This document shows positions 26,400 to 46,894 of a stretch of DNA of 64,000 bases, piece by piece. The notes below the pieces were generated by a model, which did not search any database, was not told the origin of the DNA, and saw nothing but the letters and a program-made list of their open reading frames with translations. Position 1 is the stretch's first letter; each line of letters begins with the position of its first letter. Origin of the DNA: Klebsormidium nitens. Its lineage: Eukaryota; Plantae; Klebsormidiophyceae. The stretch spans positions 186,001 to 250,000 of the forward strand of contig DF237001.1 of the NCBI GenBank assembly GCA_000708835.1, in the 5' to 3' direction. A program made the position numbers and the translations under genes.

Positions 26400-29300
26400 A
26401 TGGAACAGCAGCAGCCCAGAGGAGCTGCATTTCCGTTCACAGTGATTGATGCAGACAGTGGGGCAAGCACAGGAGCTGAAGCAGCTCCCAGATTTGATGA
26501 GAGGCAAGCAGCTATGGCAAGTCTGCAAAGTGGGATTCCGGAGGTGGTGGTTGCAGCAGCAAGTGATCTTCAATCTAGAACTGAGAGCGAAGGCAGTGTC
26601 GTTCACCTGTCTGGAACTGGGACGGGTGGAGCTGCCAACGTGGTCGCAGCCAAGGATAGGGCGGCCGCGCTGAAGGAGAAGGCAGAGGTGCTGAAAGCAA
26701 AGGCGCGCAAGCTGAAGGAAGACGCAGAGGAGAAGCAGAGAGCAGCTGAAAGAGCGCGGCTTGCGATTCTGAGAAAGGCGCGGGAGAAGGAAGAAAAGGA
26801 GGAGAGGGAAAGAGAGCGAGCGAGGGAGCGGGAAAGGGAATTGGACCAGGAGAGAGAACAGGAGATGGAGAGGGAGAAAGAGATGCAGAAAGAGAGGGAG
26901 AGGGAGAGGGAACTTGAAAGCGCAAGAGAGAAAGAGCAGGAGGCAGAGGAGGAAAAAGAACGGGAAAGAGAACGGGAAAGGGAGCAGGAAAGAGAGGTGG
27001 ATAGAGAGTGGGAGAGAGGAGCTGAGAACGGGGTGGACACTGTAATGCAGGATGCCAAAGCAGAGCAATCAGGCTCCTTGGTGGATCACGAGCACGGCAG
27101 CTCAGCAGACGCAGCTCCCTTGGATGGCGCAGTGGAGGCGCTGGTGGTTGCCAGCATGTCTCTTGGCACGCCGCGCATTCCGCTGCTGCGGAGGGGCAGC
27201 CTTGGGAGCGGGGAGTTCAGCAGGTTCAGGAAATCAGAATCCTTTCCAGAGATTGCGAATGGGGATCACGAGATGATGGATGCTGCGGTCAGCTTGTCTC
27301 CACTGGGGCGGATGGGGAGGCTCAAGGTGCAGATTCCTGACCGGCTTCTAGAGCTGCAGATGGAAGACCTTCCGGAATTCCCAGGTGGATTTGGCGAGAA
27401 AGCATCCCCTGCAGAGGACGCGGCAGCTGCGGCCATGCTTGAGATCAGCATGACACCAACCTCGGAGCTGCACGCAGGATTCAGAGACACTCCAGCTCAA
27501 GGTGTCAACGTGGGGAGCGGTGGGGCTTCAACAGCAGAGGTAACAGAAGGCCGGACGAAGAGGAAGCGGAAGCGCAACCGCATGTACTTTGATGACGACG
27601 TGGCGGTGGGTTGGCATGATTTGGACACGCCAAGGGTGGCGTCGGAGGGCGAGAAGAAGAGCGACAGCCTCCCAAAGCCGAAGAAGAAGCTCAAGATCAC
27701 GTTCAAGGGTCCGGCAGCTCTAGCTCAGAAGGACCCGCACTCAGGCAAGAACATTAGAAAGCTGAAGAGCCTCAAGCTGATCAAAGCGAAGGCAAGCAAA
27801 GCGGCCGCCGCGCCCCCGAAAGTCAAGACACCGGTTGCGAGAACGCCGCTTCCGAAATCTCCCCTGGAGCTCAAGTCGCCAGAGAGCCCGGAGGACGCGC
27901 AGTGCCCCGTATGCCAGGCGCTCCGCCGGTTCGACTGCGGCGCTGAGTCAGCACACCCGCGCTGCATCAAGGCAGCCGGCGCAGACAACGCCGCCGTTCA
28001 GGGGGGGCCCAACGCCAAGGCTGCGGCAGTTGTCCTCATGGCCGCTTTGAATTCGAGGAAAGACGCCTCCTTTGAGCCCTGGGCCGGAACTGGGGAGGAG
28101 CAACTAGAACGGGTGCCGGTTTGGGAGCCGGTCACTGGAAAACGGTTGGTCGGTGAGGACGGCCCCCGCTTGCGGAACCTGGCAAGCTGGCTGCTCCTCA
28201 ATCCTGGCTGGGAGGTCCTTCCCCGGGGAGAGTTGGAGAAACCACCACCCCCGGCAGAACCAGAGCCCATCCCGACCCCTGCCCCCCCTGCTGAGATAGC
28301 AGTGGTTCCTACCCCCCTGGAGGAGTTGAAACAGTGGCGGGGGGTTCAGGCAGAGCTCGCGTTGCTCCTCCAAGCATGGTCGTCGTTGCGGGGACGGGCA
28401 GACGCGGGCTGCTTCGGGAGTTCGCAGGAGGCAGTGGCGGCATGCCGATTCCTGGACCCTGTGAGTCTTGCGCCTGTTCAGTCTTCTGCCTTTGACAGGT
28501 CGTTGGATCGGTCAAAATGGCAGAACACTGCCTGCTTTTGCAGCGGTTAAACAGATGATGCTTCTGTGCAATTTATGAAGGACTTGTCGTCTTTCACGGA
28601 TGCCTTCTGCTTCAGCTTATTCAGCGGTGTTACTCGAAATTCGTTAAGCAGGTTAGAACAGATGCAGACTCACACTCTTCGCCCTTCCGCTGTGATTCGC
28701 AATACTGAGGCTACAGGACTAGATCGGCGTGGAGGACGGAGCCCACAAACCCCGCTGAGCTTCGCATCTTGATCTCGGGTTAAGATTCACACAGACTGAT
28801 TGATTGTCCACTCGGTTGTAGGACTTTGGCCCGCTCTGCGACCTCTTAGGCGAGGAGCGGTACGCCGACTTGGAGACCCTCCTGGCGGACTTCTCCCGAG
28901 CTTGCAACGCAGCAGCCGTGGTCCGCATCAACGACCTGAAAAAGTGAGCCCGCACAGTGCGACTGTCCCTGCGCGTTCTTGGTTCCTGGCGCACTTATGG
29001 CAGATTCACCTCTAAAATGTTCGAGCTGGAAACAGCTACAAACACGTTCTTGACAGAAGAAAGGTTCCCAGGGCTTTTCTCTCGCATTCCCACAATCGAC
29101 GCTCATAGAAGCCGTCGGCTTTAGTAGCTGCCTGCTATCGACGTTAGCAGCCCGTCTCCAGCTCGAAATGTGACGGGGGCCGCCGCCCCTGTTAGCCCCT
29201 CTGTGCTGAGTAAGGCTTTGCTGTGCTTTCATTATCAGCACGGTGCACCAGCGGCCTTTCCTAATGGCGCTCTGCTTCGTCCTCTCCTCCATTCTCGCTT

Positions 29301-32300
29301 TTCAGATCACACTTTCCTCCTCTCCGCCAAGGGCGTTTAGTCGAGGGCTGGAACGTCTAAGCTGCTCTCTTGTGTTTTGCAGGGGCTGCTATGCGCCGTC
29401 CAGCCTGCACACCAGCCCGGCGCGTTTTGTGGGCGCCGCCGAGATCCTGATTCGGCACGGCTCTGCGGACCTTCGAAGTATAGCGGACGGGGTGAACAGC
29501 GGCCGGGTGCTCAGAGACGGGGCAATGGTGATGCGCAGTGCATACACAAACAAAGAGCCGATGACAGCTGGCCCCTGGCGGCGAGAACCGTGGCCCCGCA
29601 GGTGAGAGAAACAAACACTTCCTGCGTTACTCTGTGGCGGACTTCATTCCAGAACGATACTACGAGTTACACCCGAAACTTCAAAGTGGCGAGCGCGTGT
29701 CGTTGTTATCTCTGGTTCAGGAGCATGCACGATGTTGAATCGCAAGCTGGACACTGAGGCTTGTCAAGCTCATTCTGGAACTCCTATCAGACGCTTTCGA
29801 CACTGGGATGTTTGAAACAAATTTGCAGCGTTTTGCTAAGTAGGGCCAACTTTGCCTCCTTCGTCACTTGCTGACGCCGTGCGTCTTTCTTTAACTCGTG
29901 CAGCACAATTCCGGCTCTGATCGACACGAGAACGGATCAGCCGAGCGGAGGGGCGGAAGCAGGCGGGCTCGGGCCATCTTTGGCAAGTACCTTATCCCTC
30001 ACCCGTGCCTTATTATTCAGATATTGTCCGTGCATCATCATCAAGTTAATGGGATGCGGTTTTCTGTCCTCTTTTGTCCAGGTTATGCATCGCAATCGAA
30101 GTCCTTCTAGGATTGCGTGTCTTGATGGCTTCTCTCTAACACGAAAGAAGAGGAGAGATTGAGGATTTCAAGATGGAAAAGTCAAGGATTATTCTTCCCT
30201 TTTTCCCTGTAGAGTCGAAAATAGCCTGCTTTGACCTTGCTGATGTGCCCTTCGGTGCCAGATCCGAAACCAACTTGCCATTCCATACGAGCATCATTTC
30301 GCTCGTATGTTTCAAGAAGCAGTTGGTGTACTTATCAGGTGTAGAAGGAAAGCCCTGCCCTATAGATTCAAAACCCTTTACGTTCTTTTAGTCAAGTCTT
30401 GCAAGGGAGAATGGGCGGAATCCGGTAAAATCTGCTTCGGAAAATGGTTTGACTAATGCCATCAAGGCGACTCTAGATACGACTTTGGCCGCAAAAACAA
30501 GTAGTTGATGCTTGGGTCTTGTATACAACTCTTGGAAGTCTTTCCCTGGTTGAAACGTCAAGGGATGCAATCCTTCTTGATGTGGTCAGCGGAGTCATCG
30601 AACCTCTTCTCCCTGCGCCCTGTGCAGGCCTTCGACGTCGACGTGGGTGCGGTCGACGGGTGGGGCGTAGACCCGTTCACCCGGCGCGGCATCTTAGACG
30701 CTCTGCCCAAGGACGCCGCGCGCGAGGGAGGGGGCGTCAAGAGCCGGGCCAAGACCGTCGGGGACTTCGTCACCCAAAAGCTGCTCCCGGCGCTCAACGA
30801 CCGGGTGAGGTGTTACTAGAAAATCTTCAATGTTCTGCTGATCGACTTCCCTTTAACAGCAGAGCCAGCAATGCGAGGCCTTCCTTATGCTGGATCTTAT
30901 CACGGTTCGAGCGAAGCGATATGTCTGGAGGGGTCCACGAGATGGCGTTCCGCTTTTTGTCGGTCGATCAGAGGACGTGGAGAAGAAGCGGCACATCGTA
31001 GCTTGACGATGATGATACGTCCTTGGGCCTGCTCAACGAGCGACGGGCGCATCTGAAGTGACATGTTCTCGTCGCTTGTCCGTAGCTCACCTCGAGTCCG
31101 TTCTCTACTTTCTGCCAAACACCCTATGGTCTGGTCAGAGCTAGCTGTTATGCTGCCGCTCCAACGCGCACCAGAAATTGCTAGGTTTTACATCAATACT
31201 TCAATCACCCGCCTTAAAGCGTACGCGGTTCTGCGTTCCTGGATGAGTTCGAGTAGTGGCGACCTTGCCTTCTGACTCCACTCTCACCTCATAGCAGCCC
31301 CATCCTGACGCACACTGCCCTGTTTCGGCAGGGTCCCCAAGGGTGGGACATTTTCGAGTCGCTCAAGGCGCTGGGCCTTGCGGCGGGGCGCAGCCGGGAC
31401 GCTTCCCTGGTGGAGGCAGTCACGGAGCTCGCGCACAAGATGATGGAAACGGGGCCGCTGTGGTTTAGAGTGCACCCCAAGGTGAGCCGACGTGCGCGGG
31501 TGCGGGAATGAGGTTTGGGAGCGCTCCTCTAAGGTTAAGGCGTCGTTGTCAATGTATGGGTGCGGGCGTTGGGAGCGGCATCGAGCTGGAGAAATGTGTT
31601 TGACAGCGAGCGAGGGTACTGCTTATAGCCATAACTATGGTGAAAGCAGCTCGATACATGCAGCGATATAACTTTATCTAAAAATGTTGGTGCCCAAATT
31701 AGCCGCCAGGGTTGCCCATCCCCTTGTCGTCCAGCCGTGATCTGAGGAACGGAAAGGTCGCGGGACACATGCGACTTGAGACTTTCCCGTTCCTCTACAC
31801 CAGATGCATTTCACTCCTTTCAGAACCTCAAAAGCAAAAGTTGCAAAGCAATGACTTTCATTGAATCTAGCTTCATTTTCGCCTCACTCATGCCAAAAGC
31901 ATTCTTCCTTTTAAGTCTGAACCGCATACGCTTTGGCTCCGTCAGGTCTTGCTAAACAGTGTATAAGCTCGCTCGTATCGCTCGTATCCGATTTTTGTAT
32001 CGCGTGTTCCGCAGGGCACGTCCCTCGTTTGCCAGCGGGCAGGGGGACTCGATGCCGGCACTTGCGTGGCCTCGTATCCCCCAAGCACAATTCTAAGACC
32101 ATATCAATGGTAAGTGGTGACGAGTTTCTTCAGATTCGTGACGATGATTGAACTCAAGTGAGTGTCACGTGCGATTGCAGAAGGATTTGAGTGATTTGAA
32201 CAGATCTTGACAGAGACACAGCTGGACAGGAGCGTCAGCCTGCTGTGCTCCCACAAGCACGATCAGCACGTGTATTGCAGACTCCTGGAAGAATACATGG

Positions 32301-35300
32301 GTAACTAAATAGAAGGAGGCCTACACAGTAGTCATACCGTCCTCAAGAGGCCTGAAAAAAGCAGAGGTCCGCAGTTGCTCGTGGAATTTGACACAAGAAT
32401 GACTTAGGAGTTCGGTTTGCATCTGTACAGGTTCGAGTTGCAGGAGGGGCTACGGAAGCAGTCCAAAGAGGCTGAGTTGAAACCTCCGAACCGGGTGGAC
32501 TTTCTGCTCGTGGAGCAAGCGGCGACGAGCAAGGAAGGCTACGAGGTCTTCTTCGTGGACGTTCGGAACAGGGTGAGTCGCTGGGCTGAGACTGGCTATC
32601 AGCCTTCACACACGTTCGATGCGGAGCCGTGTCTAGAGCAAATTTCCAGCGTTCGCTTCGACTGGATTAGGTCCCCGGTTTCTCCCAGGCGGATGGCGGA
32701 GCAACCTCGGAAGAAGACGATATATGGGGAATGAGGAAATGCCGGGGTGTTTGGCTGCGTCGTCCTTTTATCCATCTTTCTCAAGGAAGATATACGTCAA
32801 GCCAAGATACTAAGCCTTCGCTCTCTTTACCGATTTCAGAATGCTACAAGCCAAACCCAGTGGAGTACCCGTGCTCCACCCCCCGGACCCACTCCGAACC
32901 CCAAAGTAATTCTGCAACGTCCATTACGGGGTTCTCAGTGCCACGTTAGCTTACTGTTCTTTCTCTTTGATCGTTCTTTCATCCCGTGTGTTGCAGGAGG
33001 GCGCGCCGCCCACCCAGCTGCTCCACTCATGTCAGGCAACGTGTCAGCCCGTCATTCGGCGCGTGCAGGGGCGCCCGACTGTCGACATTCAGACCGCTCA
33101 GAGGGTGGAGCAAGGCCAGGAGCTGACGCTCAATTACACGTGCTACACGGACTCCGACGACGACGTCACGCGGAACGTAAGCGCCCAAAAGGAGACGTTA
33201 CCAGCAACTACTTCAGGACTGGCTCGTGCATCGAAAGAAGTAACTGGCAGCGCGGCTGCGAATAGGAGATAGTGGTCGTTTTCCGTCGGTCAAAAAATAC
33301 ATGTTTCGTATGAGTGACTCTCTCGGGCCCCGGTATGACCAAGTTGCCGCCCCGTTTCCATGCGGATCTGAATGTACAGTTACACGTTGGAGCTTATTGT
33401 TTGTGGAGAAGTATACTGTCACAATACCCATGGCACTACAATTTTGAAGAAGCGGAGCAAGTAGCAGCGGACTACAGAAGCAGCCAATCCAACGGCGTAA
33501 GCGATCCGAGGCCCTGTTTGGTGCAGGTGTGCTTGTGCGGCATGCCTGCTTGCCGGGGCTCGTGTTTCGTGCACCTGGGACGAGGCCCCGCCACCGCTGT
33601 CCTCAACGAAACGCACTCGTTGCCCGACCGGCTCGCGGTGCTGCTTCGAGCGGTAGGTTATGTGACGAAAAGGAGATATTGGCGAATGTGACTGACGTCA
33701 CGTTTCCAAGCAGGCGTTGGTTTATGTTCGAGGCTCTCTGTCGAGGAGTCTCAGTTGTGACTAATTGGCTTAGGCGCCTGGCAGTCACCGCGCACCCTTT
33801 TGGGTGACGTGTCTGACAATCTCTGGTTATAGCGCTGGCTCCCTGACACTAGTCAGAATATGGCGAGCTGCAATGCTGTGGCCAATTGAGTTGGTGCACC
33901 TTTGTCCTGATTCTGGGCAGAGAGCGTGTAGCATTTCGATCAGGATTGCTCGACGAAGTCAAGATGCGCGGAAGCACCTCACAGTGACACGTAGAATGTT
34001 TCTAAACGGTTCAGTGATGCCAAAAATCAGAACCGCTCGCTTACGTCAGCATGACGTCACTTTCTGCAGAGCTCTGAGGACCTGACGGCGGCGGAAGAGG
34101 AGTTGATAGTCGGCCACGGCTTTGGGCCAATGCTGCCGGACAAAGGGGACGGTCACGCACCGGCGTGGCTCCGAAAGGTGCGCTCGATCACTTGCAGACT
34201 CTTCTTTACCACCTAGTGTTCTTTTCGTTCACCACCTTTCGAAGCTGGTAAAAGGAGCCGCGCATCTCCGATGGCATGTTAAGCCAATCCAGTTCCCGAC
34301 CGCAATCTGTTAGTATGGAGGGAAGGAGAACGGGGCCTCCCGGATGGTCAGTTTTGAGGACTCCTCGGCTATAAACTTGCACATTGACGATCTAGAGAGC
34401 TCTTCCTGTCAAAGTCAACCGTCGATCCCCTGGGGGTCATAGTCAAAGGGGACCTTACGAGGGTTGGCCGGGAGTCCACGTCCTCCCTATGTCCGTGCTG
34501 AAATGCTTCGGGAGTGCACAGGGGCCCATGACAGGCAGACACGGACCCACCTTCAAGCATAGATCACCTAAGCATACAAAGAAGACTTCAGCTTTCGAAA
34601 GAATATCAGTCATTCTGTCGTAGACCTTGGATTTAGGCATGCCGCAGCCGATGATCCATGTCAGCGATCCCTTCCGCGTAGACAGACAACGTCCTCTTTC
34701 TGAAGCTGTCACACGATTTATTGTCTTCCGGTCCCGTGTTTGACCGCTGCTTGTGTGGGCTTCGCCAGTGGGCGGCGCTCGCGCTGGGCTACATCGAGCG
34801 CGAGCAGGAGCTGGTGGCGCGCGCGTTGCAGGGCCCGGAGCACGGCTACAGCAAAAGCGTGGCCGCCGCGGAAGCGAAGCACCTCCTGCCGCTGCGCCTG
34901 CAGGTACGGCCGCAAAGACAGTTCGTCTACGACCGACGCTGAGAAGCTTGCTTCTGCAGGGAGTGTTTCGAGTCTGGCGGCTGATTTTGGCACCATTTCG
35001 GCCTGAAGATTGAGTGGGAAGCGCAGTCTTTGAGTGAGAACGTGACAAAACTTCGATGAGTTCAGGCTGTACTCTTGCAACGAGGCTGTCCAATCGGAAT
35101 ACTGGTATTAAAGTGCTCAAAGGCCGCCATTCCGAGCCCAAAAGATCTAATCTACGTATTTGAGGCTCTCAAGAAGGTATAGCAAGCGCTATTGTGAGCA
35201 CAGTGTAGAGTTTCGGTGTAACTGGTCAATTACACCCATTGCTGGCCAGGTTGGCAACTGTGCAAGCAACCCGCCCGCTGATGAGACCCCCAACCTCTTT

Positions 35301-38300
35301 GCGAGCGCCCTGCTCGTCGGACCGGCTCTCGTATCACAAATGTCGCGCGTCTCCAAAACCGGACCCAAATAAACCAACTGCTTGCCCTCCTTCCCCCAGC
35401 ACCTGTACATCACGTTGGACCGCGTCCAGCACTGCCTGGCGGGCCAGCCGCCGGACGTCCGCGAGCGGCCCCCCCTGCGCGCGCTCAACGCGGGCGAGGT
35501 GTGCGAGTACCTGTGGACGGGCCGCCGCTCCGTGGGGCGCTGCCTCGTCGGCCGGCTGGCCCCGGTGCTCTGCCCCGACTGCACCGCACGGGGCAAGGAG
35601 AGGCTCAAGGTATGGGCGGGGCGTGGTTGGGACTCGTTTGCTCTTCTCACGGGGCACTTCGGTGATGCGCCATCTGAGCGGAAGGACGGGCGGTGTGGGG
35701 GCGGAGGTTTTCGGAGAGCTGATTCGCAGGACTCTTGTGCTGTCGCGTCTATTGTGCTATTTAGGATGCTAACATTACGGCTCGTGCACGTAGAGACTGT
35801 TTTGTAGATGTTAGACTAGGAGATGTTGATTCGTCAGTCTTTCCACTTTCTTGTTCCCCTTGGTTGACGTTTTTCGCATTGAAACCCGCTCGAGGAGCCT
35901 CGCAGAAGCAAAAGGTAGTGTCGAGAGAGTGTACACTGTTGTGACGTCATCAGTCTTGCGCTTGCAGCTGATCCAGCACCCCACTCCGGGCTGTGCCGCG
36001 CTCCACCGCGCCTTGCGGACGCCCTCCACGTCGACAGGGGAGTCCCCCGCTGATGTCATCAAGGCAGCACTGAACCAGCTAGCAGCTGATGTGAGTTGCA
36101 CTTCAGCAGCACCATCCGCCATAGTAAAAAGGTCACTTTTTCAAGAATAGAAGTGCAACGTCACCCGTCACTTACGTCACATACACGTCACAAAGATGCA
36201 CTCGTCACATATGTCACACACCCGCACACGTCACTCTTATTTCCCCGTCCCTCGCGTCACACCACCAAACACGTCTCGATGCAACGTCACACACGCATCG
36301 AAAAACCGTACGTCACATACTTCACAAGTCACATCAATGTACCAAAATTCCGAGCTGAAGATCTTGCGTGAGAATCTTTGATAGCGCGCTTTAGATGGAA
36401 AGGACACCTTGAAGCCGCTCGGAGTTTCGTAGTGGCAGTCAGGCGGGTACTAAGATTGAGGTATCATTCCTGAGTACGTGACTTCCCTGATCTCTGTTTC
36501 TAATCATCAGCACCGTCAGCACCGATCCAAAAGGTCCTCCTTTGCGCACCAAATTGCGACGTCACAGGTCACACAGGTCACAGGTCAAACACGTCACATA
36601 CACGTCACATATACGTCACACACGTCACACGTCACTCAGGCCATACACATTTCAAAGCGACGTCATACACACGTCCTACACTCGTACGTCAACACATCAA
36701 ATGTTGCATTTCACGTGTATTTAAATTTGAGACCCCGAGCTTAAGATCTTGCGTGAGGATTGTAAATTTGCGCCGTTTACGGAAAGGACATCGTGGAGCC
36801 ACTCGGGAGTCACGTCGCCGACAGTCAGGCGGGTACCCGGGATCAGACATCAATTTTGGATTTCTTTGAGATACATTAAGATTATTTATCGCTGAAATCA
36901 CACCAATATTGCAGGGATCAGTTCAACCGCGCTTTCTATCTAATTGCTTCGGTGAGAAGGATGGATGTTTTTGGGTAGATGGAACTATCAGTCAGTCTAA
37001 CTTAACGTACTTACTACTGACTACGGTCCGTCTGGACTGATTGCCCACTGTGTTTGCGCCTTCCGTCTCAAATTGGCTCTCATAGGGTACTGAAAATGCT
37101 TGACGTCTTGGCTTGCACTTCTCCTATCTTCAGATCAGCGCCTTCGAGTCGGACGTATGCGTCGCCGCGCGCGATCTGCTCCGCTTCTTGACAAGGTAAG
37201 CTTGCACTTTCGGCGGTGCTATGACGCTCCTTTTCCACGCCCTTGACCGCCTGTGTCAAGCTGGCAAGCTCCAACAGTATTGCACGCCTCTCGCATTTCG
37301 TCCCTCTTCTTTTGGACGGCGGTTCCACAGCACAATGTAAGTCTGGTAATTGGCAAAGGCCCTGCATTCAGACGCTAAGGGGCCTTTTGCAGCATGCGAA
37401 AGATTCAGAAACCTCGACGCTGGGCCACTGTCTGGATGATTGGGATTATTGAGAAGACGGTAGTCGTGCTTAGATCCCAAAGCGACGGGGATCGCGACTT
37501 TGTGCAGGTGGAGAATGCGGTAGCTTGGCGGGTTGCTACCGGATCCTCCACCGTACTTTCACGCGCCTTGGCTTCGGCACTAGGACGACCCCCAGCCTAT
37601 TCTTACTGGGGGGAAGCGTCCGTTGTGTCCATTTTACTTGCCCAATCCAAGCGCCTATTGCCGGGGATATCGTGCAGCCCGCTCTCTAAAACTCTGAACT
37701 TACTCCCCCCTGCAGCACCGAGACCTTCATCCAAGCGCACCGCTACGATCCCGTCACCTCTGCCCCCGTCAGCATCCCCGTAGGTGACGTCAGCGGCGCA
37801 CCCCTCTCGCAAGCTGGCCCAATTCCCCAATTGCCGCAACCAGAGGCCTCGGGACGGCTTACTGGATCGGAACTACGGCAGTCGGAGCAGGGGGACAGTG
37901 TTCTTTCGGAAGGTGCCCCGCTTAGCACTGCGGCACAAAACGCTGAGCCATTTTCTAGCATTTCGAAACCCTCGGTTTCCGCTGCGGCTTCTCGCCATCC
38001 AGACAGGGACGCAACCAACCGGGATGCACCGGAAAGCGGGCTACCCGGGACTCGGGAAGGAAACGGGGCGACGATGCGGGCGCAGGATTTTGCGGGGGTG
38101 GCGGCTCGAAGCCGCGTGTCAGATGAGCTTAGAAAGAAAACGGCTGGAGCTTCGAGTAGCGACGGGGTAGACTCGGAAGAAGCCCACACGGGTCCGTCGA
38201 CGGGGCGAGAAAGTGCGCACGTGGCAGCAGGAGCGTCGGCGGACGGCGCGGCCCGGCCCTGTGTGGTATCCTTCACCAAAACGTACCCCGGGGAATACAT

Positions 38301-39336
38301 CCTGGCGCAGCTGCTGTTTTGGCACCGGAACGCGCCCGGGTTCGATCCCGTGGCGGCGCTCGGGGAAAGTCTCCGGGGCACGTGTCTGCTTCCGGACGCG
38401 GAGTCGGTGACACGGCCCGCGGTGCCCGGGGAGAGGGCCACGTGGCTGCGGAAGCTGACGACGGAGCCGGGGGGGCCGTGGCCGTCGCAGTGGCGGTTCA
38501 AGGAGGACGCGTTGCAGGTGAGGGGTTCTGGTTTGAGATGCAGGGTTCGGAGAATGGCGAATGGGTTGTGTTGGGGTGCGTTTGTGTGCGTTGCAACCCC
38601 GCTCGCATCGGTGAAGGTTCAGCAACGACTCAATGAAAAGGCCGACGGATCCCCTGGTCTTTGAGTGCGTCGCTCGAGGAAGCAGGTACCAATGTTCCGT
38701 AAAGTACTCCTGATCCGCAGACTACAAACAAGCGGCCGATCGGGTTGGACGTTTCCGGAAGGCGAGACTTTGCGACTTCGGGAATATACCTACTGTTTCG
38801 CCTGATGCATCTGATCTTCATTAACCCCCACGACTGCCCGAGGAAGTAACCCACCGTCGACTCCGTTGGCTTGCTAGCCTTTTATATCGCACAGTCCTGT
38901 TGATCCTTCTTTCCAAGTGCTGCCAATCGCTGCTTGCAACGTTTCTTAGAGGTTGCTCCTTCAAGGCAAGTGCGAAGTCAAAAGGCCAAAAGCTGGAGGC
39001 TCGTGGAGATAAGCTCGACACCAACGAGGTGCTTCCACCAATGCGTGTGTGCTGAAGAGCCACTGTTCCCGCACGTCGTTGATGATATGGTTTCCAAGCG
39101 GTCACCTTTCTGCATGTTCCTATGAATACGATCATTGGGTGGGTTTCTGAAACTTAGCTGCCCGTATTCAAGAAATAATAGGAGAATGGTTCTCGTGCAG
39201 ATTGACAAGCCTCTCATATCTTGATCATGCGCAGGCAACTCTTGGGAATCCGCTCGTGGACGCAGCTATTCGCCGTCAGATCACGTGTGAAAGTGGGGCC
39301 TTGCTTCTGCCACCGCTGCTTCTTGACAACATATAA
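26400..39336 (+). CDS. Divergent ATXR3/SDG2-like SET-domain protein with an N-terminal E/R-rich helix, a Cys4 motif, a BRK domain and a bromodomain-like segment
   Basis: Exons: 26400-28460, 28822-28943, ~29384-29602, ~29905-29985, ~30629-30805, ~31295-31461, 32015-32109, 32431-32572, 32997-33176, 33527-33652, ~34069-34177, 34769-34903, 35400-35609, ~35968-36090, further exons near 37.1 and 37.5-38.5 kb, and 39235-39336. The splice phases I checked are compatible. Colinear matches to ATXR3 C-terminal blocks as I recall them: GVDPFTRRGILDALP, GYEVFFVD, LLHSCQATC...ELTLNY, VCLCGMPACRGS, LQHLYITLDRVQH, KTYPGEYILAQLLFW, RGTCLLPD, PWPSQWRFK, TLGNPLVDAA. Confidence 0.82.
26780..27020 (+). repeat. 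Purine-rich low-complexity coding repeat (ER/EREQ), predicted charged single alpha-helix
   Basis: GAGAGGGAAAGAGAGCGAGCGAGGGAGCGGGAAAGGGAA... translates as EKEEKEERERERARERERELDQEREQEMEREKEMQKERERERELE. Confidence 0.8.
36150..36840. repeat. Intronic ~385-bp diverged tandem duplication carrying CACGTCACA/ACGTCA microarrays
   Basis: CGAGCT(G/T)AAGATCTTGCGTGAG at 36351 and 36736; GGAAAGGACA at ~36397 and 36781; CAGTCAGGCGGGTAC at 36436 and 36822. Each block follows an array of ACACGTCACA-like units. Confidence 0.75.
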
Positions 39337-39699
39337 ACGGGTCAACCCTCGCCTCATGTACGGCGGAGTCGTTCGTAAAAGCTGTTTTCGTTGATTCAAA
39401 CGCCTTTCGAGTGGCTGACAGTAACTTAACGATCGAAAGGATGCCACGTCGTCCAGATGCGGATGGCACGCATGAGGTCTTATTCGATGTGAACTTCGTA
39501 AATCTTAGCCGAGTTGTAGTGAACCATTATACATCAACTGGGCTCGACCGCCTGAGCAGTCTTTGGCTTTCGGGGGCTATGTGCAAAGCTCCGCCACTTT
39601 TTAGTAGTTTGAGCAACGTTTCGGACGCGCATGTGCAGAGCCTATGCCTTCAGCGCGTTGCTCGCTATAGCCGCCATGAATCCGCTTGAGCCATGTAGA

Positions 39700-41450
39700 T
39701 TTGCTGCGGTCTCTCATTGATAGCAGCCGAAGTATCAGATTGAAGCAAGAAGCATGCTCATGCTAGATGACTATAACGAGTCTCGACGGCGAGTGTCCGA
39801 CTCTTGACTCTAGCCATTCATTCTCCGACCAGATCATGGCATCATACTATAGTTGTCGGGCCAGTGCATGCATGACGGATCGATCTAACTAAGATTACCG
39901 TAGTCCGCGTTGCAGGCTGAACATACGGTAGTACTGTATGCTCAGGTATGCAAGCTTCGCTGGGCCTCTGTAGATACATCATACGTACCGGTGAATCGGA
40001 TCAATGGCCCTTGCTGAGCCTGGTCGGGCTGGATACCATTTCCATTTTCGCCGCTTCGACGAAAATTACGTTAGATATGTAGGTCCTAGGTCCTAGGTCC
40101 TAGGTATACCGGTAGCCTTCAATGAATACGGCGCCCGACGGTGCGAGATTCGGATTTGCTGCATTTTCGAAAGCTCAGAGCCGTCGATCGGAATCCAATA
40201 CATTTACCTTCTTTTCCCAAGAGTATATCTCAACCGTTGCGAACACTCGCGGCCATTGCATCGACGGTCCGATCCTGATTCCTGACGTACCAAGTCGTAT
40301 ACGGCATACGTACATTGAGATCCTTGACGTCACCTTGTTTCGATACGGACCGTACGATTGCTGACCCCAAAATCATTGGAATTCCAAAAATACGAACTTT
40401 GAAATAGGTACTGGTAACAATCAGTGTTTCTTCGATCCAAGTTCCGGTACTGTACCGTGTACGTACGCAAGTCCTGACTCCTGTCGGACGCCGAGGCCTC
40501 TGGGCCGGCTCTGGCCAGCCGAGGCTCGAATATTACAGTGGCCGGTTGACCGGGATAACGGCCGTTAAAGTAGTACTGGTATCTTACACGGTATGTACCT
40601 GTGGTACTACCGTGCAGCTTATAAATCCGCCTCGATCTTCTCAATTATATTGGAAATATGTTGAATGTATGATGACGTCAAACAATCGCAGTCAATCATG
40701 TACGGTGATTGTTTTGGATCGTTTCCAATATTAAGGCATCAACCGGGCGCCATTCTCGATCACGGGCGGTCTACCGGTATCCATATTAGGTATGGCCTGT
40801 TTTGCCGACGGGTTCATTGAATTGTTTGCCCGTTGCCTGCTAGCGCTCGGCGGTCGGAGTCCGGACTCCAGACCCGGGAATTGGAAATTTTAAGTTCCGG
40901 CCACCAGGTGGGTTGGCCGGAGACTCGGAGCTAGGTCGGAGCCAGGGCTTTTCTTGCTTTTGCTTTGCTTTTGCGCACCGATTATGGCCCGTACGTGCAT
41001 ACTTAAGGCTCGGCTGACGACAATCCATCATCACACGTGTGATGACATGCCTCTGCAGATTGAGCCCAGAGAATCCAGCTGGCAGAGTCCGATGTCAACA
41101 GGAACAACCTGCACCCGGTGTTCCGAACGTCGAACTCCGGTAGCAGGTTTGCTAGCTATAATCACGACCGTCTGCAAATGATGAGCTCTTTCTTACCAAA
41201 TATGGGCTGCCTTTTCTAAAGTGGTGTCAGGAACTGGTCCCAACTACCTACCCCGGGGCCCGTCGATCGAACGAGCTTGGGGTATTAGCGCGTGTCAATC
41301 CGGTACGGTACTCCAGAGTCCAAATCTCGAAAGCGGGTTAGACATACGGACACGTCGAAACCATAAACCGATACCTGGTTCAGGCCGAGTCGTCGACCGA
41401 ACGCTTCGAACCTAACCTAGAAGTTCTGGTCAAGGGTGGGTAGCGTACCG
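39700..41450. other. Palindrome-rich / GTAC-CCGG-rich intergenic island C, possibly a decayed repeat
   Basis: GTGCATGCATGACGGATCGATC, (AGGTCCT)3 at 40081-40101, TATACCGGTA, TACTGTACCGTGTACGTACG and many CCGG/GTAC words. No recognisable protein. Confidence 0.45.
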
Positions 41451-44035
41451 CGCACCTGTAGTAGGCACCGGTCTAACTCCCAAGGTCCTTTCCGTCCCTT
41501 TCCGATACAGGCATTTTTAACACCACGACTATAGTGGGGATGCTCCATTTCCGCCGGACGCGCATCCGTTTCACGGTAGTGTGCACTGTGCACTCAGCAC
41601 TGTGCACGGCGACGTTTGATCCAGCATTTGTGGCCACTTGGTACCAGGAAGCATGCTTGCCCGTGCTCACTGCACTGAAGAAAGTGGAGAAGCGAGGCCT
41701 GCCTTTCGTGTCGCCTCTTCTGAGCCCCTCGGGGTTCCGCTCGCTTGTCTGATGGTGACCGGAACATCTTGCACATCACTGGCCAATTCGATAATACGAT
41801 ATCCGCCAGAACTATTGTTCCGGTCCGAGGAGTCCGCTGCTCGCATTAATTTGTCGTTGTCAGGGCGACCAAGGTTCCGATTTACATCTCTGGTTTGTCG
41901 GAAAGTGCGTAGCAATCCGGCACGGAAATGCCGAAGTCGTGACAACCGTCGTCCCAGCTCCTCATGCAACTTGCGAGTCATGGCGGCAGTCATGAATGCG
42001 GCACTCATGAAACCTTCGTGAGGAGTCAAGCGCATCGTTTGTTGCGGCAACCTCCTCTGCACCCTGCATGCCTCCTGGCCTTCTCTCCGTCAATATGCCC
42101 ATGCCACACGGCGCGCCGCCAACCGTGCTGAGTGGGGCAAAAGGTGGGGGGGGGAAGCAAGTGGCCTAAACTTCAAGTTGGCGGGTAGACTCCAACACTT
42201 TGACGAGGAAGGAGCTTTGAGCTGTGACCAGTGCGTAGCTGAGCTGTGCAGACAGGATCCTGCAAGTAGCTGGGCCTAGGACTAAGAGAGCTAGCTGGTG
42301 TGAGCTTTGTCTAGGGTGATGCAGGGTTGGGGCGTTTTTGAGCGAAGCCCAAAGCTGTCGGCTAACAGTCAGCTATGAAAGAGAAGACAGCCGGCATTAC
42401 GTTTTAGGGAGAGGATTTTGCACGACCGAAGCTAGAGGGTTCAACTGCACCCTCATCAACGCCTGTTTTGGCCTTCACGGGGTGGCCACAGGTGGAATGC
42501 AAGTGGAACAGGTAATGATGACATGCTTCCCCGCGTCACCCCTTCATTTGACCATTGTGGGCTTCGTTGACCATTCCGCCATGATTTCAAAATCAGTGTC
42601 AAAGTTGGGAGCTTCTCTGTTGTAGGGCCGATTTCTTGTTGAACTCTGAGAAACGCCTTCCAATCTGGAGCTATGCGTTGCATGTGGCTGTCTTACAAGC
42701 AGTTCAGAACTGGAGGTACGGCAAATGCAGGGTTTTAGTCAGGATGGTAAAATGCTGTCCAAATGCTGTCTTGTGGCGGGCTCCTATAGCACTCTTGGAA
42801 CGGGTAAAGTACGGAGGAACTTCTGTAGCACTTGTCAGGTGGGCAAAGCAGCAGGAAAGTCACGCTTCTTTGCACAGTTGGGCTGCTTGGGCCCACAATC
42901 CCCTAGCATGTGGCAGCAAAAAGCCCCTTGTGCTTTTCCTTCGCGCTTTGGGTGGACACGGGCTTCGTGGATTCTGGATGCCATGTGCATTGATGTCAGT
43001 GGCAGTCAAGCTCTGGACAGTGTAATCTCTGTCTACATTTGCTGTGACCTTGACTTTGACTTGGTTTCAGCACCATTTGGTCCATTTGCTTTTGTGGCGG
43101 TTACGTGTTTCGGAGCCTTCGCTGGCCAAACCCGTCCCTTGCTCGTTTCTGAATATTACCAACACAGAGTCGAACAACTTTTACCTGGCCGGGCTGCTTA
43201 CTAATAATTATGGAGCCTCTCACTCTTGTTCCGGGGTTGAAGCCTAACACTTGGTCAGCTGCTGGTCACAGGAAGCATCTGCTTCTCGGATTCAGCTGTT
43301 GAAGGAACCCGAGTGCCAGTCAACTCAATTGAGGGGATAATGCCAGAGAATAATTGGTAGTAATGGCAGGATCACAGGTGGTCATTTCACAATCTGGTGG
43401 GATTCTACACAATTCGCGAGTTCGGCCGCGATGTGACAAGCAAATACCCCCTGCCCTCTCCTGCCCCATTATTCTGGTGAAAGGTGCTAGTAAAAGGGCC
43501 ACGATTTGACAAAAAGGGGAGACACCTCATTTTGCATGAGCTTTGCCGTTTAATTCGAGTCCCCTTGCTTAAGTGATGCAGCCAATCATCAGCCAATTTT
43601 GACCCCCATGCTTACCCAGCACAGGTGCCCTACAGGCTGGGTGGCCTGTTCAAAAGAGTTGCTGCATCGTCGCTTGTTGCCCACCTTTGCCCATCAGCAT
43701 TCACAAAATCTCGGTTTAAGGAATCACCCTCCATTGACAGTCCCAAGATAGGAGGCAACCAGATCTGGTGCGTGCCTCATGCTGTGCACGTTGCCTTGGC
43801 CCCACTGACCCGCCCTCATTGTCGCATGCAGGCTTACTAAACGCCCTGAGAACAGCTGTCTCTGAGAATACCACCAGCAGCCTCCATCTTCAGCACAGCA
43901 TTGACTGGGGGCTGTCCGCTGAGCAAAAAAAGAGGGTACTTTAGAGTAGGCCCCAGCTTGCATCTCAGTGACAATTGGCCGGGCTGGCCCGAATGCTCCC
44001 CCGCCGGTGCCCCCCCCCATGGTGCGGGCAGTAAG

Positions 44036-46894
44036 ATGCTGGCGCTGGAGGCTGTGAGCGACACGTTAGCTAGGCTCCATCCCGTGAGCATCCCCCCCAG
44101 TCCGCTGGACCCGAATGGTTGCCTCCAGAAGCTGCAGCGGATCGATACCCCGCGGGGGGTGCTAGAGGGTGCGGTGCGCCAGCAGAGCTCCGTCACAGAG
44201 CACACGTTGGAGGGGGGGGGAGAGGTGAATGAGGGCGCGTCGGCGCAGAGCCCACTGGTGATGGAGAAAGGGGGAAATGGGCAGCAGGGGGAGGGCGTGG
44301 GCCAGGAAAACCGCCCCCCCCCCGGACAGGAGATGACGCCCGAGCAGATTGAGACCCTGCGCCGACAGGTGGCGGTGTATTGCGGGATATGCGACAACTT
44401 GATGGCCTTGCACCGTGCGAAAATGAGCGGGACCCAAGGTGAGGCTGCATGATATGTTACCAATTTTGAAGTCGACACGAGCTGGGTTGATGAATTGACA
44501 GTCCTGTTTGAACAACCAAGTTGCAAGCTGTACCAAAGTGCAAGATCATTGTGCACATCTGCAACCTGGCCTTGCTTGCAGGTGCCAAGTCCCCTTCAGC
44601 ATCTTTGTTGCAGGACTCAACATTTCACACTTGCCCCCCATTCGTTGGCATTTCTCTATCTGCAGAAAAAGTTCAACCTCCTTAGAGCTAGTGGTGTTCT
44701 TTGCAGCATCGCCATAGGCTTGTTATGTCCTCCTAGTGCCCTCTTTTGGTGAAGAGCCCTCTCACGGATTTTCAGTCTACACTTCCCTTCCTGCCCTGCT
44801 CAGCAAACTGTGTCTAACCCACATATCCAATTCGGCAGGGCCCCTACAAGGGATGGATGCCTACTACCAGGACGCATCCGCGATGATCAACCGGGGGGGA
44901 AAGCACCGGTGGGCCCCCGCAGAGGCGCAGAAAGCGGCGCTGGACCGAGTGTTTCAGGAGCTGGGGGGGGGCACCCCGAGCAAGGCGCGCATCAAGGAAC
45001 TAGTAACGGAGCTGGGTCGGCACGGGCCAGTGACGGAGTCTAACGTGTACAACTGGTTCCAGAACAAGAAGGCGCGCAGCAAGCGCAAGGTGGCGGCCAC
45101 CGAGGCGGAGAGCGGGATCGACGACCGGAACCCCAAGCGGACGCGAGAGGACGGGGCGCACTCGAGCGGCAGCCTCAACATCACGTCGTCCTTCGATGTT
45201 GACCGCATGAGCGAGGGGGGGGTTGTGTCGTCTGGGTTTGAGCAGCGCCCCGCGCCTGCGCAGCAGCTTCAGGTGGGGGGCTTGCGTCTGCTGCTTTGCC
45301 CTTTTCTCTTCCCCTCTTTCTTCGTTGTCCCTTTTCCCTGTCCTTTTCTTGCCCCACTTCCATTTCGTCTGCTGCAGCTGCTGGTAAGTGAGATCTGACC
45401 CAAAGACGATCTCTATGTTGTCCTTCCGTATCCAAGCCTGATGAACCACGCTTTTTCCCCAGATCTGCTCTGCGACGTCTTTGTTCTTCTTTGTCAAAGG
45501 AGTCCTTTACTGCAGAGCAATAAGGCTGGCTCCTGGGGGTAAATGAGCCCCTGCCAAAGGCCAATTGACATGTTCCGTTACCTATTGAGATGTTCTTTGA
45601 CCACGTCATTCTAAGTTTGCCTCTAAAAAGAATGCGCGGTGTGCTTCTCTTTGGATCACGTCTAATCGTTTAGATGGAAGTTCTGTGGGCACCCCAGATC
45701 CAAGCTTTTTATTCGAGTCTGAGCCAACTTCTCAAGTTGTGTTGCTTGGTCACATCAAGGGCTTTTCTGCAACTCCACTGTATGCCTGTTCACACCAACT
45801 CCTCCAACCAACTCCTCAGAAGTTACATTCTTGATTTCAAATCGTCATATAGTTCTGCTTTTACAGTTGACATTTGGCCGCCCGCCTTACGGCCTTTCTT
45901 CCCCCTCGTGCAGACCCCATTGGGCTGGCGCAGCGGTGCCCTTGCTCACGACATCCCTGCCCCCCGCACGCAGCTCTTTGCCGACTCCAGCATCCAAGAC
46001 GCGGCAGCCATGCTCCTTTACGCCGCAGCGGAGAACGCTGGCCAGGGGGGGGGTAGTGCAGCGCAAAGCCTGGCCAACACGCTGGGCCTGCTGGGGGCTG
46101 CGCAGGATGGGGCGTCCTTCTTCCAGGGGGGTCAGGGCGGCAGCAACATGGGGGGGGGGCTGGACCTGCCTTATGGCGCACTCACAGGGGAGAGCGCGTA
46201 CAGCCAGCCGCAGGGTGAGGGGAGCAAAACATGGAAGCCCACGGGTGTCGATGCTCGGTGCCTAAGTGCGGCGAAAGCTGCACTGTACAGCCCAAGATTT
46301 AACAAGTTGCGCACTCTGATTTGAGGATCGATTCTAGCTTTGACTTGCTGACTTGATCTATCACCTTAGCTCGGATGGTGCAGCTTGCGGAACTTCTGAA
46401 CGAGACACCCTCTTTCCGTGCTTCCACGAATAAGGGAGTGCTACTACAGTCACTTTCTATCAGAATCAAAGAGAGTTGAGAGTTGTTCACCTCCGCCTGC
46501 AGCAAAGCCGTCGTTCAAGGCTGCCACGAGATTGTTTTAGAAAACGTTTTGCCCACTTTGATCAAAATGTCTGACCAACTGTTCTGGAGCGTCAAACTTT
46601 AGCCATTGGCCGTTGCAGCCAAGCCGACAGGGATAATCGGCCTGCCTCCAAGAGCAGTAGGAGTGCTTTTTCCCGGATCTAATCTTTTGTTGACGTTTGA
46701 CCTGCAGCAGAGACGTCGTTGAAGGTGATGATCAACGGGCGGCCGTACGACGTCCCTGCGGGCCCGCTGGACGTGCGCGCCAGCTTCGGGGAGGGCATGG
46801 TGCTGTACGACTCGCGCGGGGTGCAGGTGCTCACGGACAACCTGGGGGTCACCTTCGACGCGCTGCACAACGGGGAGTCGTACTACCTGCAGAG
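44036..46894 (+). CDS. WOX: WUSCHEL-related homeobox (WOX) transcription factor; start and last exon uncertain
   Basis: Exons 44036-44438, 44839-45272, 45914-46214 and 46708/46711-46894 are phase-compatible. They encode MTPEQIETLRRQVAVYCGICDNLMALH (WOX13-type motif), the homeodomain RWAPAEAQKAALDRVFQELGGGTPSKARIKELVTELGRHGPVTESNVYNWFQNKKARSKRK, and the C-terminal KVMINGRPYDVPAGPLDVRASFGEGMVLYDSRGVQVLTDNLGVTFDALHNGESYYL. Confidence 0.88.

What the first reader, a model, noticed from the sequence alone, without database searches (positions are those of the whole stretch)
32015..33652. ATXR3/SDG2-like SET domain with eroded catalytic motifs: probable pseudo-methyltransferase
Spliced SET core: GTSLVCQRAGGLDAGTCVASYPPSTILRPYQWFELQEGLR...GYEVFFVDVRNREGAPPTQLLHSCQATC...GQELTLNYTCYTDSDDDVTRNVCLCGMPACRGS. 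Against ATXR3 as I recall it (KGLGVVCNKEGGF...VEFLGEVYPVWKWFEKQDG...ANYASRICHSCRPNC...EEITFDY...VCLCGSQVCRGS), the SAM-binding GxG has become GTS, the FxGEVY motif has become YPPSTI, and ASRI has become PTQL. The post-SET cysteines, HSC and the ELxxxY tyrosine remain. Inference: the fold is retained while H3K4 methylation may be lost or redirected, giving a chromatin scaffold or reader paralogue.
Basis: partly seen in the sequence, partly recalled or inferred. Interest (0 to 1): 0.7.

Follow-up and report, generated by a model that had tools for sequence, protein, structure and literature searches.

The report
Remodelled SET domain in algal SDG2 gene
A Klebsormidium-type green alga carries a homologue of the plant H3K4 methyltransferase SDG2/ATXR3 that has lost the family's cofactor-binding motifs yet is conserved under purifying selection in four related lineages, so it is probably a maintained, catalytically weak or dead enzyme relative.

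Summary
Four GT-AG exons (32015-32109, 32431-32572, 32997-33176, 33527-33652, + strand) encode the SET and post-SET core of a large SDG2/ATXR3-family gene, about 26400-39336. The gene also has a BRK domain in exon 1 and Pfam SDG2_C further downstream.

I compared it with 33 tool-fetched canonical SDG2-type SET domains from green algae:
- Family GxG is G-T-S here.
- Family (Y/F)xGE is Y-P-P-S.
- Family S-R-(L/M)-S-HSC is T-Q-L-L-HSC.
- Both GxG glycines and the Ser before HSC are 33/33 in the family.
- The His, the HSC/CxCx4C zinc cysteines and the catalytic Tyr are kept.

The same substitutions and the same splice sites occur in three further Klebsormidium-type lineages. SET-exon dN/dS there is 0.15-0.20 at dS 0.43-0.89, so this is not a pseudogene. 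One relative also has the catalytic Tyr changed to Asn.

By my own residue count, yeast Set1 G951S sits at the second motif-I glycine, and that mutation abolishes H3K4 methylation. A conserved pseudo-methyltransferase is therefore the best reading, at about 0.55. An atypical but active enzyme remains possible, at about 0.35.

Three things stayed untested: whether a second, canonical copy exists, whether the gene is expressed, and whether the protein has activity. The scan earlier reported another conserved dead SET paralogue elsewhere in this genome (s1-313252).

The parts
26400..28547 (+). First large coding exon of the gene. It starts MEQQQPRG, is rich in E/R/K low-complexity sequence, and holds a BRK domain at about 28107-28226.
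   Evidence: Open frame. Pfam BRK 48.1 bits, cut-off 23. The L001 relative also has BRK in its first ORF.
30661..30798 (+). Pre-SET conserved block (WGVDPFTRRGILDAL...LLPALN). It is the most constrained part of the gene.
   Evidence: tblastn to P0040, E 1.7e-4. 97.8% aa identity to L001, dN/dS 0.02.
31295..31481 (+). Exon immediately 5' of the SET core. It ends ...LWFRVHPK and supplies the family's F-R-x-H-P-K lead-in to motif I.
   Evidence: Sequence. Family alignment A1 has H10 and K12 invariant. dN/dS 0.08 against L001.
32015..32109 (+). SET exon A: GTSLVCQRAGGLDAGTCVASYPPSTILRPYQ(W). Motif I is G-T-S instead of GxG, and motif II is Y-P-P-S instead of (Y/F)xGE.
   Evidence: Scores 6.0 bits against the family HMM, where canonical members score 34-42 bits. 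Conserved in L001, L008/L011 and L009.
32431..32572 (+). SET exon B (SET-I insert region): FELQEGLRK...GYEVFFVDVRNR. The family's PDFYN..LERP motif is lost.
   Evidence: Scores 13.4 bits against 41-60 for canonical members.
32997..33176 (+). SET exon C: EGAPPTQLLHSCQATC...GQELTLNY...TRN. His, Cys and the catalytic Tyr are kept. Ser(-1) is Leu, Arg(-3) is Gln, PN is AT, and the switch residue is Leu.
   Evidence: Pfam SET 25.1 bits. PDB MLL/SET1/SETD2 alignments. 38.3 bits against 60-90 for canonical members. Family column counts.
33527..33652 (+). Post-SET exon D: VCLCGMPACRGSCFVHLG...PDRLAVLLRA. The CxCx4C zinc motif is intact.
   Evidence: 26.9 bits against 27-49 for canonical members. Lowest dN/dS of the SET exons, 0.05-0.15.
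34070..34177 (+). Next exon (SSEDLTAAEEELIVGHGFG...), the start of the SDG2_C-type region.
   Evidence: Sequence. Conserved block against L001 and L008.
35397..35603 (+). SDG2_C exon (QHLYITLDRVQ...EYLWTGRRSVGR).
   Evidence: tblastn to P0040, E 3.6e-6. 95.7% aa identity to L001.
37716..38517 (+). Large C-terminal exon with a low-complexity insert and the conserved YPGEYILAQLLFWHRN...WPSQWRFKEDALQ block.
   Evidence: Pfam SDG2_C 35.8 bits. Hits P0001-P0003 and P0005. Boundaries read.
39235..39336 (+). Last exon: ATLGNPLVDAAIRRQ...DNI plus the stop codon. It corresponds to the family's VxGSPMLDA end motif.
   Evidence: Sequence. Conserved block against L001. P0040 alignment.

Best explanation
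This is the SET/post-SET core of an intact, selected SDG2/ATXR3-family gene of a Klebsormidium-type alga.

Shown:
- In the common ancestor of at least four such lineages, the N-terminal lobe of the SET domain was remodelled. That lobe holds motif I (GxG), motif II ((Y/F)xGE) and the SET-I insert.
- The C-terminal lobe, the HSC/CxCx4C zinc cluster, the flanking pre-SET block and the SDG2_C domain were kept.
- The motif changes, their conservation, purifying selection and the domain architecture are all observed here.

Inferred:
- S-adenosylmethionine (SAM) is held largely by the motif I backbone and the residues next to HSC. The protein therefore most likely binds cofactor poorly and has little or no lysine methyltransferase activity.
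- It would then act as a non-catalytic chromatin scaffold. BRK and the other N-terminal modules would tether it. The SET C-lobe/post-SET and SDG2_C would bind the histone tail or COMPASS-like partners.
- Loss of SAM binding, loss of catalysis and the scaffold role have not been tested.
For: Family membership:
- Pfam SET on exon C.
- Pfam SDG2_C on 37717-38517 and BRK in exon 1.
- tblastn collinearity with P0040, P0041 and P0029 from the pre-SET block to the C-terminus.

Motif loss at family-invariant positions:
- Family counts are GxG 33/33, Ser before HSC 33/33 and Arg(-3) 32/33; G35 and E36 are invariant in A1.
- The window has S, L, Q, P and S at these positions.

Divergence is concentrated in the SAM-binding lobe:
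- The window scores 6.0 and 13.4 bits for exons A and B. Canonical members score 34-42 and 41-60.
- It scores 38.3 and 26.9 bits for exons C and D, against 60-90 and 27-49.

The altered form is old and maintained:
- The same residues and the same splice sites occur in L001, L008/L011 and L009.
- blastn aligns only exon-sized blocks between species.
- dN/dS is 0.15-0.20 at dS 0.43-0.89.
- The SET core (0.12-0.19) is less constrained than the pre-SET flank (0.02-0.08).

Other support:
- In L001 the catalytic Tyr codon is AAC, Asn.
- Yeast Set1 G951S abolishes H3K4 methylation while COMPASS stays intact (PMC4888839, PMC9816643, bioRxiv 10.1101/265926). By my own count from the remembered Set1 sequence, G951 is the second Gly of motif I. 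That position is Ser here.
- Maintained inactive SET proteins are known in plants: SUVH2 and SUVH9 (PMC3898904).
Against: - No activity, SAM-binding or structural test was possible.
- The active-site-shaped parts are retained: His of HSC, all four zinc cysteines, ELT..Y with the catalytic Tyr in three of four lineages, and post-SET.
- The replacement residues themselves (GTS, YPP, TQLL) are conserved. That could equally mean a re-engineered but working pocket.
- The SDG2 family already lacks the canonical Asn of NHSC. Arabidopsis SDG2 is nevertheless active (PMC11842272), so this family tolerates deviation from textbook motifs.
- Two of the changes also occur in an otherwise canonical member, P0043 (SLLSHSCSPTC: Arg lost, PN to PT).
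- The L001 Tyr-to-Asn change rests on a single assembly.
- The mapping of Set1 G951 onto this position rests on my memory of the sequence.
Confidence: 0.55

Rival explanations
1. It is still an active lysine methyltransferase. The pocket has been rebuilt with lineage-specific residues, possibly with altered product state or substrate, for example a non-histone or different lysine target.
For: - The catalytic Tyr, the His of HSC, the complete zinc cluster and post-SET are retained.
- The substituted residues are themselves invariant in four lineages.
- The SDG2 family is already atypical (S/HSC, Arg shifted by one relative to SETD2) yet active in Arabidopsis (PMC11842272).
- Leu at the Phe/Tyr-switch position could simply change product specificity.
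Against: - The second Gly of motif I and the Gly-Glu of motif II are invariant in every canonical family sequence examined.
- Gly-to-Ser in Set1, at what I count as the same place, kills activity (PMC4888839).
- The N-lobe scores only about 15-25% of canonical bit scores.
- One lineage has lost the catalytic Tyr.
- The SET core is less constrained than its flank.
Confidence: 0.35
2. It is a decaying pseudogene or a non-functional gene remnant.
For: Classical catalytic motifs are missing.
Against: - All exons from 26400 to 39336 are open and in frame.
- Splice sites are conserved in four lineages.
- Introns have diverged beyond alignment while exons are 80-93% identical.
- dN/dS is 0.15-0.20.
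Confidence: 0.03
3. The odd motifs are an artefact of the exon model. The true transcript would use other exons that carry canonical GxG and YxGE.
For: The model rests on sequence and comparative data only. It has not been checked against RNA.
Against: - A family HMM run with all filters off over every stop-to-stop ORF of the 64-kb window and of L001, L008, L009 and L011 finds no other SET-like segment.
- The exon A boundaries are conserved in all relatives.
- The upstream exon ends HPK exactly where the family has HPK-GxG.
Confidence: 0.03

Closest known systems
Arabidopsis SDG2/ATXR3 and the green-algal SDG2-type proteins (Pfam SET + SDG2_C; e.g. Ostreococcus tauri 'Zinc finger, CW-type' P0029, Myrmecia bisecta P0040)
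   Same: - The order is the same: pre-SET block, SET, post-SET CxCx4C, then SDG2_C.
- Family-typical strings are shared: HPK-G, C.R.GGL.AGT.VA.Y, W-F-E-x-Q, GY..FVD, HSC, ELT..Y, CLCG..CRGS, PDR.A.L.RA, and the YP.EY...QL..W block.
   Different: - Motif I is GxG in the family and GTS here.
- Motif II is (Y/F)xGE in the family and YPPS here.
- PDFYN is lost.
- S-R-x-S-HSC-x-PN becomes T-Q-L-L-HSC-Q-AT.
- GEEL becomes GQEL.
- The switch residue W/F/Y becomes L.
- The N-terminal reader module is BRK, not zf-CW/Tudor/SAND or PHD.
- Arabidopsis SDG2 is the major H3K4me3 writer and its catalytic domain works on its own (PMC11842272). No such evidence exists here.
Arabidopsis SUVH2/SUVH9 (SET-domain proteins without detectable methyltransferase activity that recruit Pol V)
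   Same: They are plant-lineage SET proteins kept by selection for a non-catalytic chromatin role. Their putative active site is dispensable in vivo (PMC3898904).
   Different: They belong to a different SET subfamily (SU(VAR)3-9) with a different partner domain (SRA). Here the zinc-binding post-SET and the catalytic Tyr are retained, and inactivity is only inferred.
Yeast Set1 G951S catalytic-site mutant
   Same: A Gly-to-Ser change in the SET domain of an H3K4 methyltransferase. The protein still assembles into COMPASS but cannot methylate H3K4 (PMC4888839; bioRxiv 10.1101/265926). By my count G951 is the second Gly of motif I, which is the position that is Ser here.
   Different: It is a laboratory point mutant in the SET1 subfamily. 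Here the Ser is a natural, conserved state accompanied by many other changes. The positional equivalence rests on my recollection of the Set1 sequence and not on a tool alignment.
Dead PHD-SET paralogue next to an ASHR3/NSD-type gene in this same genome (earlier scan finding s1-313252)
   Same: It is a second case in this genome of a conserved SET protein with lost cofactor-binding residues.
   Different: That protein is reported to have lost its zinc-binding residues too, and it sits beside an active paralogue. Here the zinc residues are kept and no active sister copy is known. I did not re-test that finding.

Membership tests
SDG2/ATXR3 family (SET + SDG2_C) | SET domain recognisable by profile | tested here: met
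   - Exon C: Pfam PF00856 25.1 bits, cut-off 22.4.
- Family HMM: exon C 38.3 bits and exon D 26.9 bits.
- Only the C-terminal half is detected.
SDG2/ATXR3 family (SET + SDG2_C) | SDG2_C domain (PF19633) downstream of SET | tested here: met
   35.8 bits against a cut-off of 27 on 37717-38517. Further collinear matches at 35397-35603 and 38260-38541.
SDG2/ATXR3 family (SET + SDG2_C) | Post-SET CxCx4C plus the Cys of HSC (zinc cluster) | tested here: met
   HSC in exon C and VCLCGMPAC in exon D. These cysteines are 33/33 in the family.
SDG2/ATXR3 family (SET + SDG2_C) | Family-invariant motif I, K-G-x-G | tested here: not met
   The window and all four related lineages have K|G-T-S. The second Gly is 33/33 in family sequences.
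SDG2/ATXR3 family (SET + SDG2_C) | Family-invariant motif II, (Y/F)-x-G-E-x-(Y/F)-P-P-W | tested here: not met
   The window has Y-P-P-S-T-I-L-R-P-Y-Q-W. Gly and Glu are invariant in A1. The metagenome set was selected with this motif, so it is not independent evidence.
Active SET-domain lysine methyltransferase | Catalytic Tyr of the ELxF/YDY motif | tested here: met
   ELTLNY in the window and ELTLKY in L008, L011 and L009. L001 has ELTLNN.
Active SET-domain lysine methyltransferase | SAM binding and methyl transfer to lysine | not testable with these tools
   This needs a biochemical assay. A fold of the spliced domain was not made, because the joined step was excluded by the operators.
SET pseudo-enzyme (conserved, non-catalytic) | Cofactor-contact motifs replaced while the protein stays under purifying selection | tested here: met
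   Motif counts. dN/dS 0.15-0.20 over four lineages. Conserved splice sites.
SET pseudo-enzyme (conserved, non-catalytic) | Demonstrated absence of activity | not testable with these tools
   No assay is available here. The inference rests on sequence and on the Set1 G951S precedent.

The most novel reading that the evidence does not exclude
Klebsormidiophyceae may have turned their only SDG2/ATXR3 orthologue into a BRK-bearing, non-catalytic chromatin scaffold. In land plants that protein is the main H3K4me3 writer. If so, bulk H3K4me3 in this early-diverging streptophyte lineage would be written entirely by SET1/ATX-type enzymes. The conserved pre-SET, SET C-lobe and SDG2_C modules would then carry an ancestral function of the family that does not depend on methylation.
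Probability: 0.25. Interest if true: 0.65.

Novelty: new variant of a known kind. Interest (0 to 1): 0.45.

Why it matters
SDG2/ATXR3 is the principal H3K4me3 methyltransferase of Arabidopsis, but its large non-catalytic regions are poorly understood. This is a natural form, conserved across lineages, in which the cofactor-binding lobe has been rewritten while the pre-SET block, the zinc cluster and SDG2_C are kept.

That gives an evolutionary separation-of-function case. It points to which parts of the family may work independently of methyl transfer. It also raises the question of who writes H3K4me3 in Klebsormidium. If the protein proves active instead, it would show that the GxG and YxGE motifs are dispensable in a SET enzyme, which would be more surprising still.

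Tried and rejected

2. Land-plant and streptophyte ATXR3 sequences.
- The representative search with the C-terminal exon gave only Klebsormidium-type ORF fragments and one marine fragment.
- The word search is length-limited. Even with a 2077-aa query it returned only chlorophyte SDG2-type proteins.

3. Second canonical copy in the genome.
- The metagenome scan kept only the 80 best loci, mostly uninterrupted (apparently intronless) matches from aquatic microalgae, and none came from the Klebsormidium-bearing sample.
- Earlier scan notes mention ATXR3 only in this window.
- Neither result is a real test.

4. Pseudogene: rejected by dN/dS and the conserved splice sites.

5. Alternative canonical exons: rejected by an unfiltered family-HMM scan of all ORFs in the window.

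6. A SET-I tyrosine in PDFYN as a lost SAM contact. I dropped this idea because that position is Phe in 18 of 33 family sequences.

7. Papers on Klebsormidium together with ATXR3 or H3K4me3 gave nothing relevant. One paper's supplement was not held.

All searches were exon by exon, and dN/dS counts were summed per exon.


Full report
**What is there**

The + strand between 32015 and 33652 holds four short exons with canonical GT-AG introns.
- A, 32015-32109: GTSLVCQRAGGLDAGTCVASYPPSTILRPYQ, plus a Trp codon split TG|G.
- B, 32431-32572: FELQEGLRKQSKEAELKPPNRVDFLLVEQAATSKEGYEVFFVDVRNR.
- C, 32997-33176: EGAPPTQLLHSCQATC...GQELTLNYTCYTDSDDDVTRN.
- D, 33527-33652: VCLCGMPACRGSCFVHLGRGPATAVLNETHSLPDRLAVLLRA.

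The exon before A (31295-31481) ends ...LWFRVHPK.

These exons are part of one large gene:
- A 2.1-kb first exon starts near 26400. It has a BRK domain (48 bits) and long E/R/K-rich stretches.
- A conserved pre-SET block lies at 30661-30798.
- Further exons follow at 34070-34177 and 35397-35603.
- An 802-nt exon, 37716-38517, passes Pfam SDG2_C (35.8 bits, cut-off 27).
- A last exon, 39235-39336, ends in a stop codon.

Exon C alone passes Pfam SET (25.1 bits, cut-off 22.4). It aligns to MLL, SET1 and SETD2 structures over the HSC...ELT.Y stretch. Earlier notes of the scan call the genome a Klebsormidium-type green alga. I did not verify the species.

**Relatives**

The C-terminal exon found three groups of ORF fragments at 70, 55 and 49% identity. 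Their contigs gave the homologous gene in related lineages:
- L001, a 13.5-kb genomic contig covering BRK to SDG2_C.
- L008 and L011, two samples with the same sequence.
- L009, a 66-kb metagenome contig with a homeodomain gene downstream of the SDG2_C gene, as the window has its WOX gene.

blastn between the window and these contigs aligns only exon-sized blocks at 71-94% identity. The introns have diverged beyond alignment. The AG|...|GT boundaries of exons A-D are at identical positions in all four lineages.

All lineages share G-T-S, (S/T)-Y-P-P-(S/E), P-T-(Q/P)-L-L-H-S-C-Q-(A/P)-T-C and G-Q-E-L-T-L-(N/K)-Y. The exception is L001, which reads ...L-N-N through a single TAC-to-AAC difference.

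Nei-Gojobori counts summed per exon give dN/dS of 0.15-0.20 at dS 0.43-0.89 for every pair. Along the gene, window against L001, omega is as follows:

| Region | dN/dS |
|---|---|
| Pre-SET flank | 0.02-0.08 |
| SET exons | 0.12-0.19 |
| Low-complexity insert | 0.58 |

The gene is therefore functional. The altered SET domain is old and maintained, but it is not the most constrained part of the protein.

**Comparison with canonical family members**

I did not rely on a remembered Arabidopsis sequence. Through a marine contig (L010) I obtained real SDG2-type proteins carrying Pfam SET and SDG2_C. L010's 1235-aa ORF has zf-CW, Tudor, SET (54.9 bits) and SDG2_C (109 bits). Two word searches then gave P0019-P0043, which include Ostreococcus tauri and Myrmecia bisecta proteins. 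A metagenome scan added 80 further loci.

A seven-sequence alignment (A1) has 37 invariant columns. Over 33 unique family sequences:
- both glycines of K-G-x-G are 33/33;
- the Ser before HSC is 33/33;
- the Arg three residues before His is 32/33;
- the catalytic Tyr is 33/33;
- the zinc cysteines are 33/33.

The Gly-Glu of motif II and the PDFYN motif are invariant in A1. They were also the scan patterns for the metagenome set, so that set is not independent for those two motifs.

The window keeps H-P-K-G, C.R.GGL.AGT.VA.Y, W-F-E.Q, G-Y..F-V-D, H-S-C, E-L-T..Y, C-L-C-G..C-R-G-S and P-D-R.A.L.R-A. It has Ser for the second motif-I Gly, Pro-Ser for Gly-Glu, Gln for Arg, Leu for Ser, Ala-Thr for Pro-Asn, Gln for the first Glu of GEEL, and Leu at the W/F/Y switch position.

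Leave-one-out profile scores show where the change lies:

| Exon-equivalent segment | Canonical members (bits) | Window (bits) |
|---|---|---|
| A | 34-42 | 6.0 |
| B | 41-60 | 13.4 |
| C | 60-90 | 38.3 |
| D | 27-49 | 26.9 |

The remodelling is concentrated in the N-terminal, cofactor-binding lobe. An unfiltered scan of all ORFs in the window found no alternative SET-like exon.

**Caveats on the motif argument**
- The SDG2 family as a whole is already non-canonical. It has Ser rather than Asn before HSC, and its Arg is shifted by one relative to SETD2's R-F-M-N-H. Arabidopsis SDG2 is nevertheless the major H3K4me3 enzyme, and its catalytic domain works when tethered (PMC11842272).
- One otherwise canonical member, P0043, also lacks the Arg and has PT for PN.
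- The alignment of YPPSTILRPYQW to the family needs an indel and can be drawn in two ways. Gly-Glu is absent in both.

**Interpretation**

The most likely reading is a conserved, catalytically impaired or dead SDG2 homologue. The supporting points are:
- loss of residues that never vary in the family;
- concentration of change in the SAM-binding lobe;
- somewhat relaxed constraint on the SET core relative to its flank;
- loss of the catalytic Tyr in one lineage;
- the yeast precedent. Set1 G951S is described as a catalytic-site mutation that abolishes H3K4 methylation while leaving COMPASS intact (PMC4888839, PMC9816643, bioRxiv 10.1101/265926).

On that precedent, I counted back from H1017 (the NH histidine, also a catalytic mutant in PMC9816643) in the Set1 sequence as I remember it. 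G951 then falls on the second Gly of motif I, which is the position that is Ser here. That mapping is my own knowledge and not a tool result.

Maintained inactive SET proteins are known in plants: SUVH2 and SUVH9 (PMC3898904). The scan has also reported another such protein in this genome (s1-313252, not re-tested here).

Against this reading, the His, the full zinc cluster, the post-SET and (in three lineages) the catalytic Tyr are kept, and the replacement residues are themselves conserved. A rebuilt but working pocket therefore cannot be excluded. I give about 0.55 to the pseudo-enzyme reading, 0.35 to an atypical active enzyme, and a few percent each to pseudogene and mis-model.

**What could not be done**
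- No land-plant ATXR3 sequence could be fetched with the length-limited searches.
- The genome could not be searched for a second, canonical copy, so 'paralogue' versus 'sole orthologue' stays open.

**Novelty**

Non-catalytic SET proteins are a known kind. The few full-text paper searches I ran found no description of an SDG2/ATXR3-family member with this remodelled N-lobe. I class it as a new variant of a known kind, of moderate interest. The interest rises if this turns out to be the only SDG2 orthologue of the lineage.

Noticed in passing
L001:5478-5657 (exon C homologue): The catalytic Tyr codon of ELTLNY is AAC (Asn) in this relative, through a single T-to-A difference. The rest of its gene looks intact and selected. 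This rests on one Logan assembly.
   Followed up: partly
window 33117-33152: A 36-nt stretch of exon C (CAGGAGCTGACGCTCAA.TACACGTGCTACACGGAC) is identical in all four lineages at all but two nucleotides, including almost every synonymous site, whereas neighbouring codons vary. This may reflect an extra constraint at the RNA or DNA level.
   Followed up: no
window 30661-30798: The pre-SET block WGVDPFTRRGILDAL...LLPALN is the most constrained part of the gene (97.8% aa identity, dN/dS 0.02 against L001). It is recognisable in Myrmecia P0040. No Pfam domain covers it.
   Followed up: partly
window 26400-28547; L010:5164-10480; P0041: SDG2-type proteins carry different N-terminal reader modules in different green lineages. 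This gene and L001 have BRK. The marine Mamiellophyceae-type proteins have zf-CW, a Tudor domain and weak, sub-threshold SAND-like matches. P0041 has PHD fingers.
   Followed up: partly
L010:6297-10480: In the marine alga contig the SDG2-type gene is called as two ORFs (1235 aa and 159 aa) that overlap by 4 nt at 10001. This suggests a frameshift, a short intron or an assembly error inside SDG2_C.
   Followed up: no
L009:10001-17942 and window 37716-46893: The order SDG2-like gene followed by a homeodomain (WOX-type) gene on the same strand is shared between the window and the 66-kb metagenome contig L009.
   Followed up: no
P0043 (residues about 321-516): This otherwise canonical SDG2-type SET domain (GHG, YRGE) has SLLSHSCSPTC. 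It lacks the family Arg and the Asn of PN, so those two positions are not strictly required in the family.
   Followed up: no
window 26700-27100: Exon 1 has a long ERE/KEK-type charged repeat (EREREREREL..., EKEREREREREQEREVDREWERG). It is probably a coiled-coil or disordered linker.
   Followed up: no
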